Virus record (IMG/VR): IMGVR_UViG_3300021197_001489
Coordinates: 186,001 to 250,000 of that record
DNA length: 64,000 nucleotides
Strand: one strand, 5' to 3'
Below are positions 26,175-44,005 of the stretch, piece by piece; positions within the stretch are counted from its first letter, which is position 1; each line of letters opens with the position of its first letter. Under the pieces are notes generated by a model. It was not told the origin of the DNA and did not search any database. It worked only from the letters and a program-made list of their open reading frames with translations. Both the position numbers and the translations under genes were made by a program.

Positions 26175-26204
26175 GGTTGACCTTTTATCTATATGTGTTA
26201 TACT
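26175..26204 (+). promoter_or_regulatory. Early sigma70-type promoter 1
   Basis: GGTTGACCTTTT; TTGACC 26177-82, 16 nt, TATACT 26199-26204. Confidence 0.75.
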
Positions 26205-26233
26205 GTATGTACAGTTAGAAAAAAGGAGCAGAC

Positions 26234-26555: not shown

Positions 26556-26586
26556 GGTTGACCTTTTTGTAAATATCGGTTATACT
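26556..26586 (+). promoter_or_regulatory. Early sigma70-type promoter 2
   Basis: GGTTGACCTTTT; TTGACC 26558-63, 17 nt, TATACT 26581-86. Confidence 0.8.
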
Positions 26587-26616
26587 ATATATAACAGTTA
26601 GGAAATAGGAGCTAGT

Positions 26617-26975: not shown

Positions 26976-27161
26976 ATGTCAGATAAAAAAATTATTGCTA
27001 GCGATCCTGAAGACCAAGCCGCCTATGATGAGTTTTTTGCCAAGGGCGGCAAGGTTACAGTGTGCGATACAAATGCTCGCACAGAAGATTTGGTAATTAA
27101 TCCTTGGCAGCGCGGCCGCGGTCGTCCAAAAGCTAAGCCAGAAGCAAAGGCAAAAAAATAA
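26976..27161 (+). CDS. Small early protein (FFAKGGKVTVC motif)
   Basis: AGGAG RBS before ATG 26976. Confidence 0.65.
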   Translation: MSDKKIIASDPEDQAAYDEFFAKGGKVTVCDTNARTEDLVINPWQRGRGRPKAKPEAKAKK

Positions 27162-27316
27162 TGTATTATGTAATTGGAGAAGATGAAAACGGCGAGTTTG
27201 ATGCATGGGAGCATCTTACTGCTGAACAGGCAATGGCAGTTAGAAATGAGTACATGCTGCTAGGACGTGAAAATAGATTGGGTAAAATGCCTGACCAAAT
27301 TCAACAAACTGGTTGA
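27161..27316 (+). CDS. Small hypothetical protein (51 aa, not in ORF track)
   Basis: TAATG-coupled ORF MYYVIGEDENGEFDAWEHL... Confidence 0.55.
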   Translation: MYYVIGEDENGEFDAWEHLTAEQAMAVRNEYMLLGRENRLGKMPDQIQQTG

Positions 27317-27341
27317 CCTTTTGTAAAAACTGTCGTATAAT
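27311..27341 (+). promoter_or_regulatory. Early sigma70-type promoter 3
   Basis: GGTTGACCTTTT; TTGACC 27313-18, 17 nt, TATAAT 27336-41. Confidence 0.82.
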
Positions 27342-27382
27342 CAATTATAAGCTGAAAAAGCAAACACATTGAGGAGCTAGAC

Positions 27383-28195
27383 ATGCGTAATGCAAAACAA
27401 GAATCAAAAACTATCAAATTTGAAACAGACGAGCAGGTAATCAAGCGTATTGCTACTCGCTTTAATATTCTACATGACATGACCAAAGCAGTTATTGCAG
27501 GCGATGTCCGTGCAATGATTGTAACTGGTCCTCCGGGTGTGGGCAAAAGTTACGGTGTAGAGCAAGAACTTGACAAAAGTTCTATGCTGGATCAAATTGC
27601 CGGACGTGGCATAAAGTTTGAAGTTGTTAAAGGTGCAATGACTGCACTGGGTTTGTATGCCAAACTGTACGAGCATGCAGACAAGAACCATGTTATTGTG
27701 TTTGACGACTGTGACAGTGTGCTTATGGACGAACTTAGCCTTAACATACTCAAAGCTGCACTGGATTCAGGCAAGAAACGTACACTACATTGGAATGCAG
27801 ACAGTGCAAAACTTCGTGCAGAAGGTATTCCAAACAAATTTGAATTCAAGGGTGGTGTTATCTTTATTACCAATGTTAAGTTTGAGAACATCCGCAGCAA
27901 AAAACTGCAAGACCATCTTGAGGCACTGCAAAGTCGTTGTCACTATCTAGATCTTACACTGGATACAATGCGGGACAAGTTTTTGCGTATTAAACAGATC
28001 TGCGCTACAGGTGAACTGTTTGCGGGTTATGATATCAGCACAGACCAACAAAACGAAGTGCTTGACTTTATGAATGAAAAGAAAGATATACTTCGTGAAA
28101 TGAGTTTGCGTATGGCGCTAAAGATAGCTGATCTTACCAAAGTCTCTCCTAATTGGAAAGAACTTGCTGAGAATACAGTAATGCGTCGTAGGTAA
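27383..28195 (+). CDS. AAA+ family ATPase (early)
   Basis: Walker A GPPGVGKS, Walker B VIVFDDCD, FITN, ALQSR arginine finger. Confidence 0.88.
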   Translation: MRNAKQESKTIKFETDEQVIKRIATRFNILHDMTKAVIAGDVRAMIVTGPPGVGKSYGVEQELDKSSMLDQIAGRGIKFEVVKGAMTALGLYAKLYEHADKNHVIVFDDCDSVLMDELSLNILKAALDSGKKRTLHWNADSAKLRAEGIPNKFEFKGGVIFITNVKFENIRSKKLQDHLEALQSRCHYLDLTLDTMRDKFLRIKQICATGELFAGYDISTDQQNEVLDFMNEKKDILREMSLRMALKIADLTKVSPNWKELAENTVMRRR

Positions 28196-28197
28196 AA

Positions 28198-28237
28198 CGG
28201 ATTGTCATTTAAACAGATCTAGCTCCTGGACAATCTG
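28198..28237 (+). ncRNA. Putative 3'-UTR regulatory hairpin displaying an anti-Shine-Dalgarno loop
   Basis: Stem CGGATTGTC/GACAATCTG; loop TCTAGCTCCT is the reverse complement of AGGAGCTAGA 27372-81. Confidence 0.5.
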
Positions 28238-28243
28238 AACCTT

Positions 28244-28277
28244 AGTGGGCAGTTGAAACATACTGCCCACTCTTTTT
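28244..28277 (+). terminator. Rho-independent terminator
   Basis: AGTGGGCAGT-N8-ACTGCCCACT-CTTTTT. Confidence 0.85.
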
Positions 28278-28294: not shown

Positions 28295-29455
28295 ATGCCA
28301 TACTGTCATTCCCCATGGACAAACTTAGATATTGACCCCCAAGGCTATATGTCGCCTTGCTGTAAATTTGACTACAGTAAATATGATGATAGTCCTCTCA
28401 ATATCAAGGACAACAGCATCAATGACTATCTTAACAGCAATGTTGTGCTACAAGCCAAGGAAGATTTTGAAAACAATCGCTGGCCTGCTGGCTGCATACG
28501 CTGTAAAATAGAAGAAGAAAGCAATGTGCAAAGCAAGCGCCAACTGGATTATGAACGCTGGCAAGACCAATATAACAATTATGCAAAAGAGCAGAAACTT
28601 ATTACTGCGAGTATTGCTTTTGGTAACACTTGTAATTTAAAATGCATTACATGCGGCCCAGGTTCAAGCAGTAAGTGGTACAACGAGTCACAAGCAATAA
28701 ACAAAAAAACTCCAGAAGTAAAGCATTTTTATGCCAATAACAAAGCAAATCATTTTTATAAACAAAACTTTGTAGAAAACTTTTTAGCACAGACACCTAA
28801 TTTAAGTCATCTTGACATACCAGGTGGGGAACCGTTCTTGAGCGGTGTAAAGCAACAAAAAGATCTATTAGGCTGGTATATAAAAAACAATCAGGCAAAA
28901 GACATTAGTATTCATTACACAACCAATGCACAGTTATATCCAGATGATGAATGGTGGAATCTATGGCAGCATTTCAAAGAAATTGACATACAACTTAGTA
29001 TTGACGGTATTGATGCAAGGTACGAATATATCAGATTTCCTGGAAACTGGAATAAATTTATTGAAAACTGTAAACAATTCCAAACAGCCGAAAAGTCAAA
29101 TAAAAATATCAGGCTTAGTTTAAGTCATACGTTAAGTGCCTATAATATTTACTATCTTGATGAATTCTTTACATGGTGTGAATCTATGCATTTGCCAAGA
29201 CCGTGGGTTGGCAGGGTTCAAAACCCTCCGCACATGAGGGTTAGTGTTTTTCCAACTGATATAAAGAATCTGATTGTTAGCCACTTGTCTACTTCTCAAT
29301 TCGATGACGTAAAAACTTGGGCAAAACATCTCAATGAGACTGATGATAGTACATATTACAAAGACTTTCTCACACGTTTAGAAGCACATGATGAATATCG
29401 TAGTATCTCTTTTCAAAATACGTTTCCTGAATTAGCCAAAATACTTGCTAATTAA
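28295..29455 (+). CDS. Radical SAM protein with twitch/SPASM-like N-terminal domain
   Basis: YCHSPW..PCC..C.RC; CNLKCITC; GGEPF; YTTN; SIDG..EYIR; TAAGTA-N5-ATG. Confidence 0.87.
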   Translation: MPYCHSPWTNLDIDPQGYMSPCCKFDYSKYDDSPLNIKDNSINDYLNSNVVLQAKEDFENNRWPAGCIRCKIEEESNVQSKRQLDYERWQDQYNNYAKEQKLITASIAFGNTCNLKCITCGPGSSSKWYNESQAINKKTPEVKHFYANNKANHFYKQNFVENFLAQTPNLSHLDIPGGEPFLSGVKQQKDLLGWYIKNNQAKDISIHYTTNAQLYPDDEWWNLWQHFKEIDIQLSIDGIDARYEYIRFPGNWNKFIENCKQFQTAEKSNKNIRLSLSHTLSAYNIYYLDEFFTWCESMHLPRPWVGRVQNPPHMRVSVFPTDIKNLIVSHLSTSQFDDVKTWAKHLNETDDSTYYKDFLTRLEAHDEYRSISFQNTFPELAKILAN

Positions 29456-40911: not shown

Positions 40912-42314
40912 CTGATTACACATATGACGTACAAAAATTATTCCTAGAGATGATAATGCAAGATGCAGAAAGCTATCTGCGTGTGCAAAATATTTTCAAT
41001 GTGGAAAACTTTGACAGAGACTTACGCGATGCAGCCGAGCTTATTTACAACCACGCTGACCAACACAAAACACTTCCAGAACGCTCGCAGCTAAAAGCAG
41101 TAACAGGTACTGACTTGCTGGAGATTCCAGATCTCAATGAGGGCCACACTGATTGGTTTTTGGGAGAGTTTGAAGCATTTACTAGGCGCAGTGAACTAGA
41201 ACGAGCTATCTTAAAAAGTGCAGACTTGCTAGAAAAAGGCGAGTATGACCCAGTTGAAAAGCTAATCAAGGACGCAGTGCAAATAAGTTTAACAAAAGAC
41301 TTGGGCACAGATTATTTTGAAGATCCGAGAGCAAGACTTGCAGCACTCAAAGACAATAACGGACAGAACAGTACTGGCTGGAACAACTTAGACAAGTTGT
41401 TGTATGGCGGATTTAACAGAGGCGAACTACAGATATTTGCTGGCGGCTCTGGATCGGGTAAAAGTTTGTTTATGCAAAACCTAGCAGTGAACTGGATGGA
41501 AGCTGGACTAAGCGGAGTTTACATTACACTTGAATTAAGTGAAGGTTTGACTGCTATGCGTATTGATAGTATGTTGACAAATACGCCAAGTAAACAGCTA
41601 TTCAAAGATCTAGATACTGTTGAAATGAAAGTAAAGATGATGGGCAAGAAAGCAGGAGGTCTGCAAATAAAGTACATGCCTGCACAAAGCAACGTCAATG
41701 ACATAAGAGCATTTGTAAAAGAACTAAGCATCAAACAAGGCAAAAGCATAGACTTTATGTGCATTGACTACTTGGATTTGCTTATGCCAGTAAGTGCTAA
41801 GGTATCGCCAAATGATCTGTTTGTGAAAGACAAGTATGTATCAGAAGAACTGCGTAACTTGGCAAGAGAACTTAACATACTGTTTGTTACAGCATCTCAG
41901 CTGAACAGAGGTGCTGTAGAAGAAGTAGAGTTTGATCACAGTCATATATCTGGTGGTATTAGCAAGATCAATACTGCTGACAATGTGTTTGGTATCTTTA
42001 CAAGCAGAGCAATGCGTGAAAGAGGACGTTATCAACTACAGCTAATGAAGACCAGAAGTTCAAGCGGTGTTGGAATGAAAGTTGATTTGGAGTTTGATGC
42101 TGAAAGTTTGCGTATACGTGACTTAGGAGATGATGAAGAGTATCAACAGTTTAAGAAACAATCAAGTTCGATTTATGATCAAATAAAAGCAAAGTCGCTT
42201 GTAACAGACAGCGAAACAGAAGCAACTGTGGCGGATGAGCCTGGCAAGATTGTTGCTGACGTACAAAGCACAAAACTTAAACAGATGTTAGCTGGCATTA
42301 AGCAAAAAGGTTAA
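40908..42314 (+). CDS. gp41: Replicative DnaB-like helicase (T4 gp41-like)
   Basis: STGW..LD, GGSGSGKS, YITLE, IDYLDL, TASQLNR, MKTR. Confidence 0.93.
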   Translation: MTDYTYDVQKLFLEMIMQDAESYLRVQNIFNVENFDRDLRDAAELIYNHADQHKTLPERSQLKAVTGTDLLEIPDLNEGHTDWFLGEFEAFTRRSELERAILKSADLLEKGEYDPVEKLIKDAVQISLTKDLGTDYFEDPRARLAALKDNNGQNSTGWNNLDKLLYGGFNRGELQIFAGGSGSGKSLFMQNLAVNWMEAGLSGVYITLELSEGLTAMRIDSMLTNTPSKQLFKDLDTVEMKVKMMGKKAGGLQIKYMPAQSNVNDIRAFVKELSIKQGKSIDFMCIDYLDLLMPVSAKVSPNDLFVKDKYVSEELRNLARELNILFVTASQLNRGAVEEVEFDHSHISGGISKINTADNVFGIFTSRAMRERGRYQLQLMKTRSSSGVGMKVDLEFDAESLRIRDLGDDEEYQQFKKQSSSIYDQIKAKSLVTDSETEATVADEPGKIVADVQSTKLKQMLAGIKQKG

Positions 42315-44005
42315 GCATACTGATCAATAGGCATTGCTTTTACGTTCTTGCGTTTTACTTTTAAAAAGTTGCTGTTGTCTTTGGTCCACATTTGTCCTTC
42401 GCCAACTATAACACTGTTACGAGCATACTTCACAGGACGGTCGACCACAAGATCAACATAACGCCCTTCGCCAACACCCAGTGTTATAAAATGTATGTAA
42501 TTTTTACTATCGCTTTTAAACACTCTACTGTTTGCTACTATTCCGGCAAACTGAAACTTGTCTAAAAACAAGTTTTGCAATCCCATGTTTGGCAAAAAGC
42601 CAGGGCTGTTCCATGCACCGTGCTCTTTGAAACTCTCAACAGGATCTTCTGTGATCCAGTTGTCAAAGCCTAAGTCACGTAGATCCCAGCCAGCACGTTT
42701 TGCTTCGTTGCGATATACCCAACGTGCATATGATCCTTGACAGTGCTTCAAGCAAGCACGCCAAAATTCTTTTGGATTGTGTACTTTATGATATGCCAAC
42801 GCCCATATAAGTCTACCCAAGTTAACTGCGTGTGCTCGGCACAAGCCAAATCCACTTAGGCTTTGCATTTGTTCGTAGATGTCATGCTTGTCTGGATGAT
42901 CACCTAGTTTTGCCATAAACTGCATCATCTTTTCTTCGTTCTTTTTGGCAAATGCTCGTCTGTACATGTCCGCTTCATAGGGATTGATGCCAATCAGTTT
43001 CATTATTTTGTGTATGGCATCGTCTTCATATACTATGGCATTCTTTTGTATGCCTTTTTCACTCCAGTCACGGAACCAACTGGCCTTGCGTCTACCTTCC
43101 ATAGCAACAGGACGTACCAAAGCACTAGCAAACACACAGTCTTCGACTCCTGTTGGCTGCAACGCTCGGAACAGTCTTTTCATGGTCGGCGATTCACCTT
43201 GTGTGACACCAAGTACATCGCCTCTGCACAACAAGTCACTGACTGCTTCATCTTGTTTTGGATATGAGTCTAGTCTTGTGTGAGGATCTATTTCTAATAG
43301 CTGTGATAATCCTCTGTTGGCCAGTATATCTACTTTCAAATGTTCCAGGTCTTCAACTTCGTTTTTGTCTAACAGTATGAGATTGTCGTCACGGAATAGA
43401 CTTTTGGGTAATGCTCTGTCAAACACAAGCACACCCCCACAGTGCTTGCTTATGCAACGTTTCTTGCCCATTAATTTGCGTTCAATGCGTTTTGCTTCTT
43501 TTTCGTCGACACCCAGTTTTGCATAATCTATGTCTTTTGGCAATCTGCCTTTTGCACCTAGACGTTTTGCTGCTTCGCGTTTTGCACTCTTTTCTCTGTA
43601 AAGCACATAGTTTGATATCCTGGCACTCTGTGTTGGCCATTTATCAAATACACGTTGCATTGCAAGTTCTTGTTTGTGATGCGGTATATCAATATCCACA
43701 TCAGGCAAGTCGTCTCTGTGTGGGTTTAAGAAACGTGCCAGTGGTATGTTCCACTCAATCGGATCAACATCAGTTATGCCCATGAGGTAGCAAACCAAAC
43801 TGCTACCAGCACTGCCGCGTGTCATGTGTGGTATGTCACTGTTGAGATCAAGTATAAGTCTTATTTTGAGAAAGTAATCTGTAAAACGCTGCTGAAGTAT
43901 AATTTCAAATTCTTCTGCTAGTCTATCTTGATATTCGTTGCCTACAGGAGTAGGTCTTCTAAATTGTTCTAATAATAATTCTATTTGCTCTAGTTCTGTT
44001 TTCAT
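42311..44005 (-). CDS. dnaE: PHP-less family-C DNA polymerase (DnaE-like), 564 aa
   Basis: RGSAGSSLVCYLMGITDVDP, PDVDID, KHCGG, KVDIL, QGES, ALVRP, GLCRAHA, C-terminal OB-like strands. Confidence 0.9.
   Translation of the reverse strand: MKTELEQIELLLEQFRRPTPVGNEYQDRLAEEFEIILQQRFTDYFLKIRLILDLNSDIPHMTRGSAGSSLVCYLMGITDVDPIEWNIPLARFLNPHRDDLPDVDIDIPHHKQELAMQRVFDKWPTQSARISNYVLYREKSAKREAAKRLGAKGRLPKDIDYAKLGVDEKEAKRIERKLMGKKRCISKHCGGVLVFDRALPKSLFRDDNLILLDKNEVEDLEHLKVDILANRGLSQLLEIDPHTRLDSYPKQDEAVSDLLCRGDVLGVTQGESPTMKRLFRALQPTGVEDCVFASALVRPVAMEGRRKASWFRDWSEKGIQKNAIVYEDDAIHKIMKLIGINPYEADMYRRAFAKKNEEKMMQFMAKLGDHPDKHDIYEQMQSLSGFGLCRAHAVNLGRLIWALAYHKVHNPKEFWRACLKHCQGSYARWVYRNEAKRAGWDLRDLGFDNWITEDPVESFKEHGAWNSPGFLPNMGLQNLFLDKFQFAGIVANSRVFKSDSKNYIHFITLGVGEGRYVDLVVDRPVKYARNSVIVGEGQMWTKDNSNFLKVKRKNVKAMPIDQYA

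What the first reader, a model, noticed from the sequence alone, without database searches (positions are those of the whole stretch)
28196..28277. 3'-UTR hairpin displays an anti-SD complementary to the early-gene ribosome-binding sites: candidate early shut-off RNA
Seen in sequence: between the AAA ATPase stop and its terminator there is a 9-bp stem (28198-28206/28229-28237). Its loop carries TCTAGCTCCT (28218-28227). This is the exact reverse complement of AGGAGCTAGA (27372-81), the RBS of the same ATPase gene. It also matches AGGAGCTAG (26607-15, 9/9) and AGGAGC-AGA (26224-32, one bulge). These are the first genes behind each of the three GGTTGACCTTTT promoters. The complementarity extends beyond the generic SD into a CTAG(A) tag that RBSs elsewhere in the window do not share (AGGAGAA, AGGAGTA, AGGAGAC). 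Inference: a 3'-UTR-derived sRNA, or a long-range cis pairing, coordinately silences a class of early mRNAs as negative feedback.
Basis: partly seen in the sequence, partly recalled or inferred. Interest (0 to 1): 0.78.

Follow-up and report, generated by a model that had tools for sequence, protein, structure and literature searches.

The report
Phage mRNA tail pairs its own start
Just behind an early ATPase gene of an uncultured marine jumbo phage sits a conserved RNA hairpin whose loop is complementary to that gene's own ribosome-binding site and to the start of a late transcript, so it is probably a built-in RNA brake or timer, not a general early-gene shut-off.

Summary
A 9-bp hairpin (28198-28237) lies between the ATPase stop codon and an intrinsic terminator. 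Its loop carries TCTAGCTCCT, the exact complement of the ATPase ribosome-binding site (RBS) at 27372-81.

In one genome this is only modestly unusual: rank 1 of 407 genes, about 0.3 such matches expected. Relatives make it real. The hairpin plus terminator follows this NrdC.10-like ATPase gene in most of the 80 fetched relatives (64-94% protein identity). Eight of its 10 stem pairs show compensatory changes.

The loop also changes together with the gene's own RBS:
- UCUAGCUCCU with AGGAGCUAGA
- CUUGCUCCUC with GAGGAGCAAG
- CUCUCUCUCU with AGAGAGAGAG
- UUACUCC with GGAGUAA

Cognate pairs beat swapped pairs at P about 5e-6.

The "class of early genes" idea fails. Only 2 of about 26 early-promoter genes carry the tag, and the neighbours' tags are not conserved.

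The strongest partner genome-wide lies outside the window. It is a 16-17-nt perfect complement at the predicted 5' end of a late transcript, conserved in four lineages, and a distant lineage has a different-sequence counterpart.

Best reading: an icaR-like 3'UTR anti-RBS element that acts on its own mRNA and probably in trans on a late leader. No expression or repression data exist.

The parts
27311..27341 (+). Early sigma-70-type promoter of the ATPase mRNA (GGTTGACC, 17-nt spacer, TATAAT)
   Evidence: Consensus scan scores 11 of 12. It is one of three exact GGTTGACCTTTT copies in the window. I counted about 20-25 similar promoter plus 5'UTR cassettes genome-wide.
27372..27381 (+). RBS of the ATPase gene, AGGAGCTAGA: the proposed partner of the 3'UTR loop
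   Evidence: Read directly. It is the best own-RBS versus own-3'UTR match of 407 genes. The equivalent RBS in relatives covaries with their loops.
27383..28195 (+). AAA-type ATPase gene, 270 aa, homolog of T4-group NrdC.10 (phrog_1250, function unknown)
   Evidence: Pfam gives AAA_16 and AAA below their cut-offs; phrog_1250 scores 1.9e-83. tblastn hits lie under features annotated nrdC.10 in RB69 and PP01. The protein lacks the ~60-100-aa N-terminal domain of distant homologs.
28198..28237 (+). Conserved 3'UTR hairpin: 5' arm 28198-28206, 22-nt loop 28207-28228, 3' arm 28229-28237
   Evidence: Present in the minimum-free-energy fold. In 17 distinct relatives 88.6% of cells pair, against 27-46% when the partner is slid, and 8 of 10 pairs change on both sides. 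The covariance model finds one copy in the window and one each in genomes G001 and G003.
28218..28227 (+). Anti-RBS in the loop, TCTAGCTCCT (TAGCTCCT is invariant across the aligned relatives)
   Evidence: Exact complement of 27372-81. These are invariant columns in alignment A2.
28217..28233 (+). 17-nt stretch (loop plus first 5 nt of the 3' arm), ATCTAGCTCCTGGACAA, exactly complementary to G000 263752-263768: the predicted 5' end of a late transcript, outside the window
   Evidence: blastn-short E = 0.005. It is the top site genome-wide in G000 and in G001. The motif is invariant in four leader lineages.
28244..28277 (+). Intrinsic terminator of the ATPase mRNA (10-bp GC-rich stem, 8-nt loop, T-run)
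   Evidence: Found by the terminator scan and the fold. Most relatives that keep the hairpin have a GC-rich hairpin plus T-run at the same place, with a different sequence.
26607..26615 (+). RBS AGGAGCTAG of the neighbouring 116-aa early gene: 9-nt match to the loop, judged incidental
   Evidence: Read directly. Not present in relatives. The gene has no ortholog in G001.
26224..26232 (+). RBS AGGAGCAGA of the 101-aa early gene: 6 nt contiguous plus a bulge, judged generic
   Evidence: Read directly. AGGAGC occurs in 9 of the ~26 early-gene RBSs genome-wide.

Best explanation
The hairpin is a conserved RNA-RNA pairing element in the 3'UTR of the NrdC.10-like ATPase mRNA.

Shown by sequence:
- The mRNA is predicted to run from the promoter at 27313-41 to the terminator at 28244-77.
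- The hairpin sits 2 nt after the stop codon.
- Its loop presents a pyrimidine-rich sequence complementary to the RBS of the same mRNA, about 840 nt upstream.
- This complementarity is kept across lineages even though both sequences change.

Inferred:
- Once the full transcript exists, the loop pairs with the RBS. This could happen within one molecule, or between molecules as a stable hairpin-plus-terminator fragment of about 80 nt.
- The pairing occludes the SD and the spacer up to position -2. It therefore limits further translation initiation, and perhaps triggers decay, as in S. aureus icaR.
- The same loop plus the first bases of the 3' arm also pairs with the 5' end of a late-promoter transcript: 16-17 nt perfect, computed ddG about -19 kcal/mol against about -10 for the own RBS. 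The early mRNA tail therefore probably also acts in trans on a late leader.

The direction of the effect (repression or activation) is not known.
For: 1. Conservation and structure. The hairpin plus terminator follows the ATPase stop in most of the 80 IMG/VR relatives at 64-94% protein identity. Eight of 10 stem pairs carry compensatory changes. The loop core TAGCTCCT is invariant. There is one copy in the window and one each in G001 and G003.

2. Covariation with the own RBS. An unbiased scan ran from the open-frame boundary to the aligned start. In L044, L047-49, L053, L059-64, L073 and L086 the best complement fell on the SD before the first plausible in-frame ATG. Loop/RBS pairs found:
- TCTAGCTCCT / AGGAGCTAGA, 11 nt in L008
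- CTTGCTCCTC / GAGGAGCAAG
- TTGCTCCTCC / GGAGGAGCAA
- CTCTCTCTCT / AGAGAGAGAG
- CTCTCTCC / GGAGAGAG
- TTACTCCT / AGGAGTAA

Cognate against permuted pairs over 10 lineage representatives: summed longest match 85 against 64.2 +/- 4.7, P = 5e-6; energy P = 1e-4.

3. The start codon of the window lineage lies at a different position from that of the 70%-identity lineages, because the N-terminal domain is missing. Both RBSs nevertheless match the same loop.

4. The own RBS is the best or joint-best match within the fetched locus (up to 3 kb each side) in the loci where I could check it. It ranks first of 407 genes in G000.

5. Late-leader partner.
- It is the top hit genome-wide in G000 (17 nt, -33.9 against next -25.9) and in G001 (16 nt, -31.4 against -26.4), at orthologous sites whose downstream protein is only 48% identical.
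- GTCCAGGAGCTAGAT is invariant in four leader lineages while the flanks vary, starting 5-6 nt after a TAAATA late-promoter box.
- The distant G023/G024 records have a different sequence pair at the same position: 17 nt with one mismatch and one G-U, score 32 against a null maximum of 29 in 148 windows.
- In G003 the single outlier is the RBS of a csgF-like gene behind an ATTAAATA box.

6. Plausibility. Anti-SD-like sequences hundreds of nt downstream pair with the RBS and repress in vivo (PMC12697547). icaR shows the 3'UTR/SD mechanism (PMC3868564).
Against: - There is no RNA-level evidence. Metatranscriptome contigs cover the region but give no ends or strand.
- Cis action, trans action and the sign of the effect are all unresolved.
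- The element is missing in several lineages: L040, L054, L058, L066, L072, L074, L076, L077. L066 keeps an AGGAGCTA RBS without any 3' partner.
- It is also missing in cultured relatives T2, Vibrio phages D479 and Va3.
- Fine-scale covariation is imperfect. L022 has an uncompensated loop change. L084 and L085 match only the SD core (6 nt). The L014 group has 8 nt plus a bulge.
- The 10 lineage representatives collapse into about four independent sequence states, so the permutation P overstates independence.
- All loops are pyrimidine-rich and all RBSs purine-rich, which raises baseline complementarity.
- Gene starts in metagenomic relatives are my predictions.
- The late-promoter assignment rests on motif similarity to T4 (TATAAATA). 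In G000 the box is ATTAAATA.
Confidence: 0.6

Rival explanations
1. The hairpin plus terminator is primarily a trans-acting riboregulator, either the 3' end of the mRNA or a processed ~80-nt sRNA. Its real target would be the 5' end of a late transcript: the leader of the 158-aa membrane-protein gene in G000 and G001, and the csgF-like RBS in G003. The match to the own RBS would be secondary, arising because the late target is itself SD-like.
For: The late-leader duplex is much longer and stronger than the own-RBS duplex: 17 against 10 nt, and ddG -19.0 against -9.9 kcal/mol. It is the single outlier genome-wide in three genomes. It is conserved across lineages whose adjacent protein is only 48% identical. 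A different-sequence counterpart exists in G023, where the own-RBS match is only 6 nt. The architecture, a seed in a loop plus a terminator hairpin and U-tail, is that of known 3'UTR-derived sRNAs.
Against: Own-RBS covariation is seen in at least four independent sequence states. For most of those lineages no late partner could be examined, because both loci were never on one contig. G002 (86% complete) has the hairpin and the own RBS but no third site. In G003 the target gene differs from that in G000 and G001. No small RNA species has been observed.
Confidence: 0.25
2. One reading: the loop is a class-specific anti-SD that coordinately shuts off the early genes behind the GGTTGACC promoters, recognised through a shared CTAG(A) tag.
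For: Three consecutive early genes in the window have RBSs with 10, 9 and 6-plus-bulge nt of complementarity. AGGAGC is frequent among early RBSs.
Against: Only 2 of about 26 early-promoter first genes genome-wide have 9 nt or more; the others have only the SD core. The number of RBS hits of 9 nt or more is about what I estimated for chance. The neighbours' tags are absent in 14 relatives and are not conserved between G000 and G001.
Confidence: 0.05
3. The hairpin is only a 3' stability or termination structure, or a binding site for a protein that likes pyrimidine-rich loops (for example ribosomal protein S1 or a phage factor). On this view the complementarity to RBSs is a by-product of composition.
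For: The hairpin lies next to a terminator, where protective hairpins are common. Several lineages have long, low-complexity CU-rich loops that would match any strong SD. L084 and L085 match only the SD core.
Against: Matches extend 3-6 nt beyond the SD core, into lineage-specific flanks, on both partners. Cognate pairs beat non-cognate pairs. A 16-17-nt perfect complement at an orthologous late leader in several lineages is not explained by composition. No Rfam family matches.
Confidence: 0.08
4. A DNA-level element: inverted repeats flanking the ATPase gene, or the same double-stranded motif in two orientations, serving recombination, replication or a DNA-binding regulator.
For: The motif occurs in both orientations in the genome.
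Against: One copy is always an RBS or a transcript 5' end on the sense strand, and the other is always displayed in a covarying hairpin loop before a terminator. The G023 pair includes a G-U pair, which is a mismatch at DNA level. Bulged matches occur in L041, L042 and G003. No repeat extends beyond the pairing region.
Confidence: 0.02

Closest known systems
icaR mRNA 5'UTR-3'UTR interaction in Staphylococcus aureus (Ruiz de los Mozos et al. 2013, PMC3868564)
   Same: A pyrimidine-rich anti-SD motif in the 3'UTR is complementary to the SD region of the same mRNA. In icaR this blocks initiation and creates an RNase III substrate. The pairing spans the whole coding region.
   Different: icaR has a long 3'UTR (the paper selects 3'UTRs over 100 nt); here it is about 80 nt. 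Here the motif sits in a covarying hairpin loop directly before the terminator. The host is a virulent jumbo phage rather than a bacterium. The complementarity covaries across many lineages. A second, stronger complementary site lies on another (late) transcript. No functional data exist here.
Long-range anti-SD-like sequences that pair with the RBS (Gill et al. 2025 preprint, PMC12697547) and the B. subtilis hbs 5'/3'-UTR interaction (PMC5737220)
   Same: Anti-SD-like sequences several hundred nt downstream of an RBS can pair with it in vivo, lower translation and promote decay. 5'/3' UTR contacts also tune mRNA stability.
   Different: That work reports such sequences as depleted from endogenous genes. 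Here one is positively conserved and co-evolves with its RBS, which implies selection for the contact.
3'UTR-derived small RNAs of bacteria (reviewed in PMC9438474)
   Same: The architecture is the same: a conserved seed upstream of the mRNA's own intrinsic terminator, with conserved complementarity to the 5' region or RBS of another transcript.
   Different: No processed species, no internal promoter and no chaperone dependence are shown. The seed is in a hairpin loop. One target is the parent mRNA itself.
RBS sequestration in T4 early read-through transcripts, relieved in late transcripts (recalled from memory; not checked in a paper here)
   Same: A T4-type phage uses RNA pairing at an RBS to tie translation to the early or late transcription programme.
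   Different: In T4 the sequestering arm is local, lying immediately upstream in the same leader. Here it is about 840 nt downstream in the 3'UTR, or on a different transcript.

Membership tests
5'UTR-3'UTR SD-occluding interaction (icaR type) | An anti-SD motif in the 3'UTR complementary to the SD region of the same gene | tested here: met
   10-nt exact complement in the window. Seven to 11 nt in most lineages that have the element; L084 and L085 have only 6 nt.
5'UTR-3'UTR SD-occluding interaction (icaR type) | RBS and 3'UTR lie on one transcript | tested here: inconclusive
   The predicted promoter is at 27313-41 and the terminator at 28244-77, with no strong terminator between them. RNA contigs do not define ends.
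5'UTR-3'UTR SD-occluding interaction (icaR type) | The pairing is real (in icaR: shown biochemically and by mutation) | tested here: met
   In silico only. Cognate against non-cognate covariation gives P = 5e-6. Computed ddG is -9.9 kcal/mol after opening costs.
5'UTR-3'UTR SD-occluding interaction (icaR type) | Pairing lowers translation initiation and/or triggers RNase III cleavage | not testable with these tools
   Needs reporters, toeprinting or RNase III assays.
3'UTR-derived trans-acting sRNA | A stable small RNA comprising the mRNA 3' end with the terminator hairpin and U-tail | not testable with these tools
   The terminator is present, but no read-level RNA data were available; only assembled contigs.
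3'UTR-derived trans-acting sRNA | A conserved seed with conserved complementarity to another transcript's 5' region | tested here: met
   Loop core invariant. A 16-17-nt complement to the late leader is the top genome-wide hit in G000 and G001. The motif is invariant in four lineages. G023 has a different-sequence counterpart.
3'UTR-derived trans-acting sRNA | Own promoter inside the coding sequence, or a processing site | tested here: not met
   No promoter-like site on the + strand between 27341 and 28275. Processing cannot be assessed.
Any described RNA family (Rfam 15) | Match at the gathering threshold | tested here: not met
   No Rfam match anywhere in the 64-kb window.
Intrinsic (Rho-independent) terminator | GC-rich stem-loop followed by a U-run at the end of the gene | tested here: met
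   28244-28271 has 10 pairs (6 G-C) followed by CTTTTT. Relatives have one at the same place.

The most novel reading that the evidence does not exclude
The 3' tail of an early phage mRNA is a dual-purpose riboregulator. It closes its own mRNA by pairing with its RBS. As an early RNA it also binds the extreme 5' end of a late transcript encoding envelope or membrane-associated proteins: the 158-aa tail-anchored protein next to a phage porin in G000 and G001, and the csgF/csgG-like genes in G003. That would be an RNA-based link between the early and late programmes of a T4-type jumbo phage. I found no such link described in the literature I searched.
Probability: 0.3. Interest if true: 0.8.

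Novelty: new member of a known kind. Interest (0 to 1): 0.62.

Why it matters
Base pairing between a bacterial mRNA's 3'UTR and its own ribosome-binding site is known from very few cases, with icaR the paradigm. Recent work suggests that distant anti-SD sequences are usually selected against.

Here such a contact appears to be positively selected. It co-evolves across a large clade of uncultured marine jumbo phages. This gives natural covariation evidence for a 5'-3' mRNA contact, and it gives a ready set of natural compensatory variants for testing.

If the late-leader pairing is functional, it would add an RNA layer to the temporal control of T4-type phages, which is classically explained by promoters, sigma and Mot factors, and nucleases.

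It also attaches a regulatory feature to NrdC.10, a widespread phage ATPase of unknown function whose dosage evidently matters.

Tried and rejected
- Rfam scan of the whole window: no family.
- Megablast against cultured phages: no close relative. Only 33-46% protein-level homologs.
- Class-wide early tag: rejected by the genome-wide promoter and RBS tally and by relatives.
- A minus-strand reading of the hairpin as an RBS: SD-to-ATG spacing is 14 nt and the ORF is 19 codons. Judged implausible.
- The uORF in the late leader: 34 aa in G000, a possible 9-codon uORF in L319 and L324, none in G001. Not conserved (read).
- RNAduplex with 80-90-nt windows: uninformative, because many windows score equally well. 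Replaced by ungapped scoring and 32-nt windows.
- Pairing the ATPase 3'UTR with the late leader in other lineages, including the CU-rich-loop ones: 25 further large records never held both genes. G023 and G024 were the only exceptions. The resemblance of leader motifs such as GAGAGTGAG to loops such as CACTCTCTC therefore stays an untested lead.
- RegB-type SD-cleaving nuclease (PF10715) in G000: no hit, but the search had no positive control.
- Metatranscriptome contigs: they cover the early genes, and one contig crosses the hairpin and terminator. They carry no strand or end information and may be DNA carry-over.
- Cultured relatives: T2, D479 and Va3 lack the element. PA5oct has only an 8-nt match between its RBS spacer and the 3' arm of its 3'UTR hairpin.
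- A diverged copy of the missing N-terminal domain upstream in the window: no significant similarity (E = 0.27).

Full report
**What the window is.** The window is bases 186001-250000 of a 316-kb virus record (G000; 41% GC, 91% complete by CheckV's estimate) assembled from marine metagenomes. The phage is a T4-type jumbo phage. It has sigma-70-like early promoters followed by a conserved 5'UTR cassette. The T4 late-promoter word TATAAATA is under-represented, 14 copies against 35 expected, and 9 of the 14 precede an ORF. The "AAA ATPase" (27383-28195) belongs to phrog_1250, function unknown. It is the homolog of T4-group NrdC.10 at 33-46% identity to cultured phages.

**Checking the observation.**
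- Stop codon at 28193-95.
- A 9-bp stem, 28198-206 with 28229-237, including one G-U pair.
- A 22-nt loop containing TCTAGCTCCT (28218-27).
- A strong intrinsic terminator at 28244-77.
- The loop decamer is the exact complement of the ATPase RBS, AGGAGCTAGA (27372-81).

Within this genome alone the match is unusual but not decisive. Among 407 crudely called genes, the ATPase has the longest complementarity between its own RBS and its own 3'UTR. The null rate for 10 nt or more is 0.0008 per gene, about 0.3 per genome.

**The hairpin is a conserved structure.** I fetched 80 IMG/VR relatives of the ATPase at 64-94% protein identity. Most keep a hairpin followed by a terminator directly after the stop codon. 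In 17 distinct sequences of the TAGCTCCT type:
- the loop core T.TAGCTCCT is invariant;
- 8 of 10 stem pairs show changes on both sides;
- 88.6% of cells are paired, against 27-46% when the 3' partner is slid by 1-3 columns.

Other lineages have a hairpin at the same place whose loop is a long CU-rich tract, for example GCTCCTCCTCTCTCCTCC or CCCTCTCTCTCTTCTTCTC. A covariance model built from the alignment finds exactly one copy in the window and one each in the complete genomes G001 and G003. No Rfam family matches.

**The loop covaries with the gene's own RBS.** In distant relatives the protein carries an extra N-terminal domain of about 60-100 aa, as in T2 (322 aa). The true start is therefore 180-294 nt upstream of the aligned start. 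I scanned the whole stretch from the open-frame boundary to the aligned start for the best complement to the 3'UTR. In most lineages it fell exactly on the SD in front of the first plausible in-frame ATG.

| Lineage | Loop or 3'UTR | Own RBS | Length |
|---|---|---|---|
| Window group | TCTAGCTCCT | AGGAGCTAGA | 10 nt (11 in L008) |
| L059, L061, L063 | CTTGCTCCTC | GAGGAGCAAG | 10 |
| L047, L048, L062, L064 | TTGCTCCTCC | GGAGGAGCAA | 10 |
| L060 | CTCTCTCTCT | AGAGAGAGAG | 10 |
| L073 | CTCTCTCC | GGAGAGAG | 8 |
| L049, L051 | TAGCTCCT | AGGAGCTA | 8 |
| L041, L044 | GTCTAGCTCCTA | TAGGAGC-AGAC | one bulge |
| L078, L086 | TTACTCC(T), directly after the stop, no hairpin | (A)GGAGTAA | 7-8 |

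With 10 lineage representatives, cognate RBS/3'UTR pairs beat permuted pairs. The summed longest match is 85 against 64.2 +/- 4.7 (P = 5e-6), and the energy test gives P = 1e-4.

Three caveats apply:
- The representatives fall into about four independent sequence states.
- Both partners have biased composition.
- There are imperfect cases: L022 has an uncompensated change, L084 and L085 match the SD core only, and the L014 group has 8 nt plus a bulge.

One sub-lineage (L021, L023, L029, L032) has an additional 9-10-nt complement between its 5'UTR (ACAACATTGC) and the 5' arm of its terminator. The window lineage lost the N-terminal domain and starts at a different position behind its own promoter. 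Its RBS still matches the same loop as the 70%-identity lineages.

**The "class of early genes" reading fails.**
- Of about 26 first genes behind early promoters genome-wide, only the two in this window have 9 nt or more of complementarity. All others share only the SD core.
- The number of RBS hits of 9 nt or more in G000 is what I estimated for chance.
- In 14 relatives with 2.4-3 kb of upstream sequence, only the ATPase's own RBS carries the tag.
- The 26617 gene has no ortholog in G001. An extra tagged early gene in G001 has an untagged ortholog in G000.

**An unexpected second partner.** The best complement anywhere in G000 to the loop plus 3' arm is a 17-nt perfect match, 28217-28233 against G000 263752-263768 (E = 0.005). 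It lies in an intergenic region 43 nt upstream of a 158-aa gene for a protein with a hydrophobic C-terminal segment and no known function.

- In G001 (328 kb, complete, ATPase 84% identical) the ortholog of that gene is only 48% identical. A 16-nt perfect complement sits at the same place and is again the top site genome-wide.
- With 32-nt windows that allow bulges, each genome has one outlier: -33.9 against -25.9 in G000, and -31.4 against -26.4 in G001.
- Relatives of the 158-aa gene carry a T4-type late promoter TATAAATA about 60-70 nt before the ATG.
- In four lineages (G000, G001, L319, L324) GTCCAGGAGCTAGAT is invariant, starting 5-6 nt after the TAAATA box, at about the place where a T4-type late transcript would be expected to start. 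The flanks vary.
- In the distant records G023 and G024 the two genes lie 1.7 kb apart. The ATPase 3'UTR (ACCCTGGCTCTGTACTG) pairs with TAGTACACAGTCAGGGT, which starts 3 nt after TTTAAATA. That is 17 nt with one mismatch and one G-U pair, scoring 32 against a null maximum of 29 in 148 windows.
- In G003 (70% lineage) the single outlier (-29.0 against -24.2) is the RBS of a csgF-like gene followed by a csgG-like gene, behind an ATTAAATA box. The site is kept with one change in G007 and G008.
- After paying for hairpin opening, the computed gain is -19.0 kcal/mol for the late leader and -9.9 for the own RBS.

**Interpretation.** The most economical reading is an RNA-RNA pairing element.
- *Shown:* a conserved, covarying hairpin; co-evolution of its loop with the gene's own RBS; and conserved complementarity to a late transcript's 5' end.
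- *Inferred:* pairing occludes the SD, limiting translation, and possibly creates a double-stranded decay substrate, as in icaR (PMC3868564). The finding that anti-SD-like sequences hundreds of nt downstream pair with the RBS and repress in vivo makes this plausible (PMC12697547).
- *Unresolved:* whether the element works within one molecule, between molecules, or as a processed ~80-nt RNA, and whether it represses or activates the late gene.

The 5' arm of the hairpin starts 2 nt after the stop codon. A terminating ribosome would therefore probably melt it and expose the 17-nt stretch. That spacing is not conserved in all lineages, so I treat it as speculation.

**What is missing.** RNA evidence is lacking. 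Metatranscriptome assemblies contain close relatives of the region, including one contig across the hairpin and terminator, but give no ends or strand and may be DNA carry-over. The element is absent from several lineages and from T2 and Vibrio phages D479 and Va3. PA5oct shows only an 8-nt match between its RBS spacer and its 3'UTR hairpin. The element is therefore a lineage-restricted regulatory add-on of the NrdC.10-like gene, not a universal feature.

**Verdict.** The element is a new, phage-borne member of the icaR-type 5'-3' UTR interaction, with a probable additional trans target. In the searches I ran I found no description of this in T4-type or jumbo phages.

Noticed in passing
window 26175-26222, 26556-26606, 27311-27371; by my count about 20-25 sites in G000: A highly conserved early promoter plus 5'UTR cassette (GGTTGAC..GTTATACTGTATGTACAGTTAGAAA..AGGAG) is repeated genome-wide in front of small early genes. 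The transcribed part TGTACAGTTAGAAA is conserved as strongly as the promoter.
   Followed up: partly
window 28295-29455: The gene after the terminator encodes a radical SAM protein with an N-terminal SPASM-like Cys cluster (Pfam SPASM 8e-06; phrog_14086). It has no recognisable SD in front of its ATG.
   Followed up: no
window 27383-28195 compared with L041-L086: The window's NrdC.10-like ATPase lacks the conserved ~60-100-aa N-terminal domain (MSxxLIKxGSYRN..AKGxxVTVDG) that distant homologs and T2 have. A promoter sits where that domain would be encoded. The upstream ORF 26977-27161 shares only an AKGGKVTV-like octapeptide with it (E = 0.27).
   Followed up: partly
L194:2112-3682 (G003 42112-43682): This 343-kb relative encodes a CsgF-like protein (PF10614, 4e-15) and a CsgG-like lipoprotein with an SH3 domain (PF03783, 1.3e-53) behind a late-type ATTAAATA box. 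That is a phage-borne curli-secretion-channel-like pair.
   Followed up: partly
L006:211-1071 (G000 about 262.5-263.3 kb, outside the window): A phage-encoded Gram-negative porin (Porin_4, 6.7e-22) with a signal peptide lies two genes upstream of the late-leader target.
   Followed up: no
L021, L023, L029, L032: 5'UTR -24..-15 against the terminator 5' arm: In one sub-lineage the 5'UTR ACAACATTGC is also complementary (9-10 nt) to GCAATGTTGT in the terminator stem and loop. This is a second, colinear 5'-3' contact, in a lineage whose loop-RBS match is only 8 nt.
   Followed up: partly
L211 (PA5oct 248735-249933): In Pseudomonas phage PA5oct the spacer of the homolog's RBS (GGAGTAGCATTT) matches 8 nt of the 3' arm of the hairpin in its 43-nt 3'UTR (ATGCTACT). 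This may be a distant analogue in a cultivable phage that could be tested.
   Followed up: partly
L006:1510-1614; L319, L324 leaders: The SD-like motif in the late leader is followed by a 34-codon uORF in G000. By my reading of the sequences, L319 and L324 have a 9-codon uORF that stops 1 nt before the main ATG; G001 has none. Translational coupling is possible in some lineages.
   Followed up: partly
G000 whole genome: TATAAATA is strongly under-represented (14 found, 35 expected) and mostly precedes ORFs, which fits T4-type late promoters. Two such late genes have RBSs (GGAGAGCTAGAATG at about 268.1 kb, AAGGAGCTATACATG on the minus strand) with 8-nt complementarity to the loop.
   Followed up: no
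G000 53234 (outside the window): A tRNA-like sequence (GGTTCCATAGCTCAGCTGGATAGAGC...) starts directly behind one of the early promoters.
   Followed up: no
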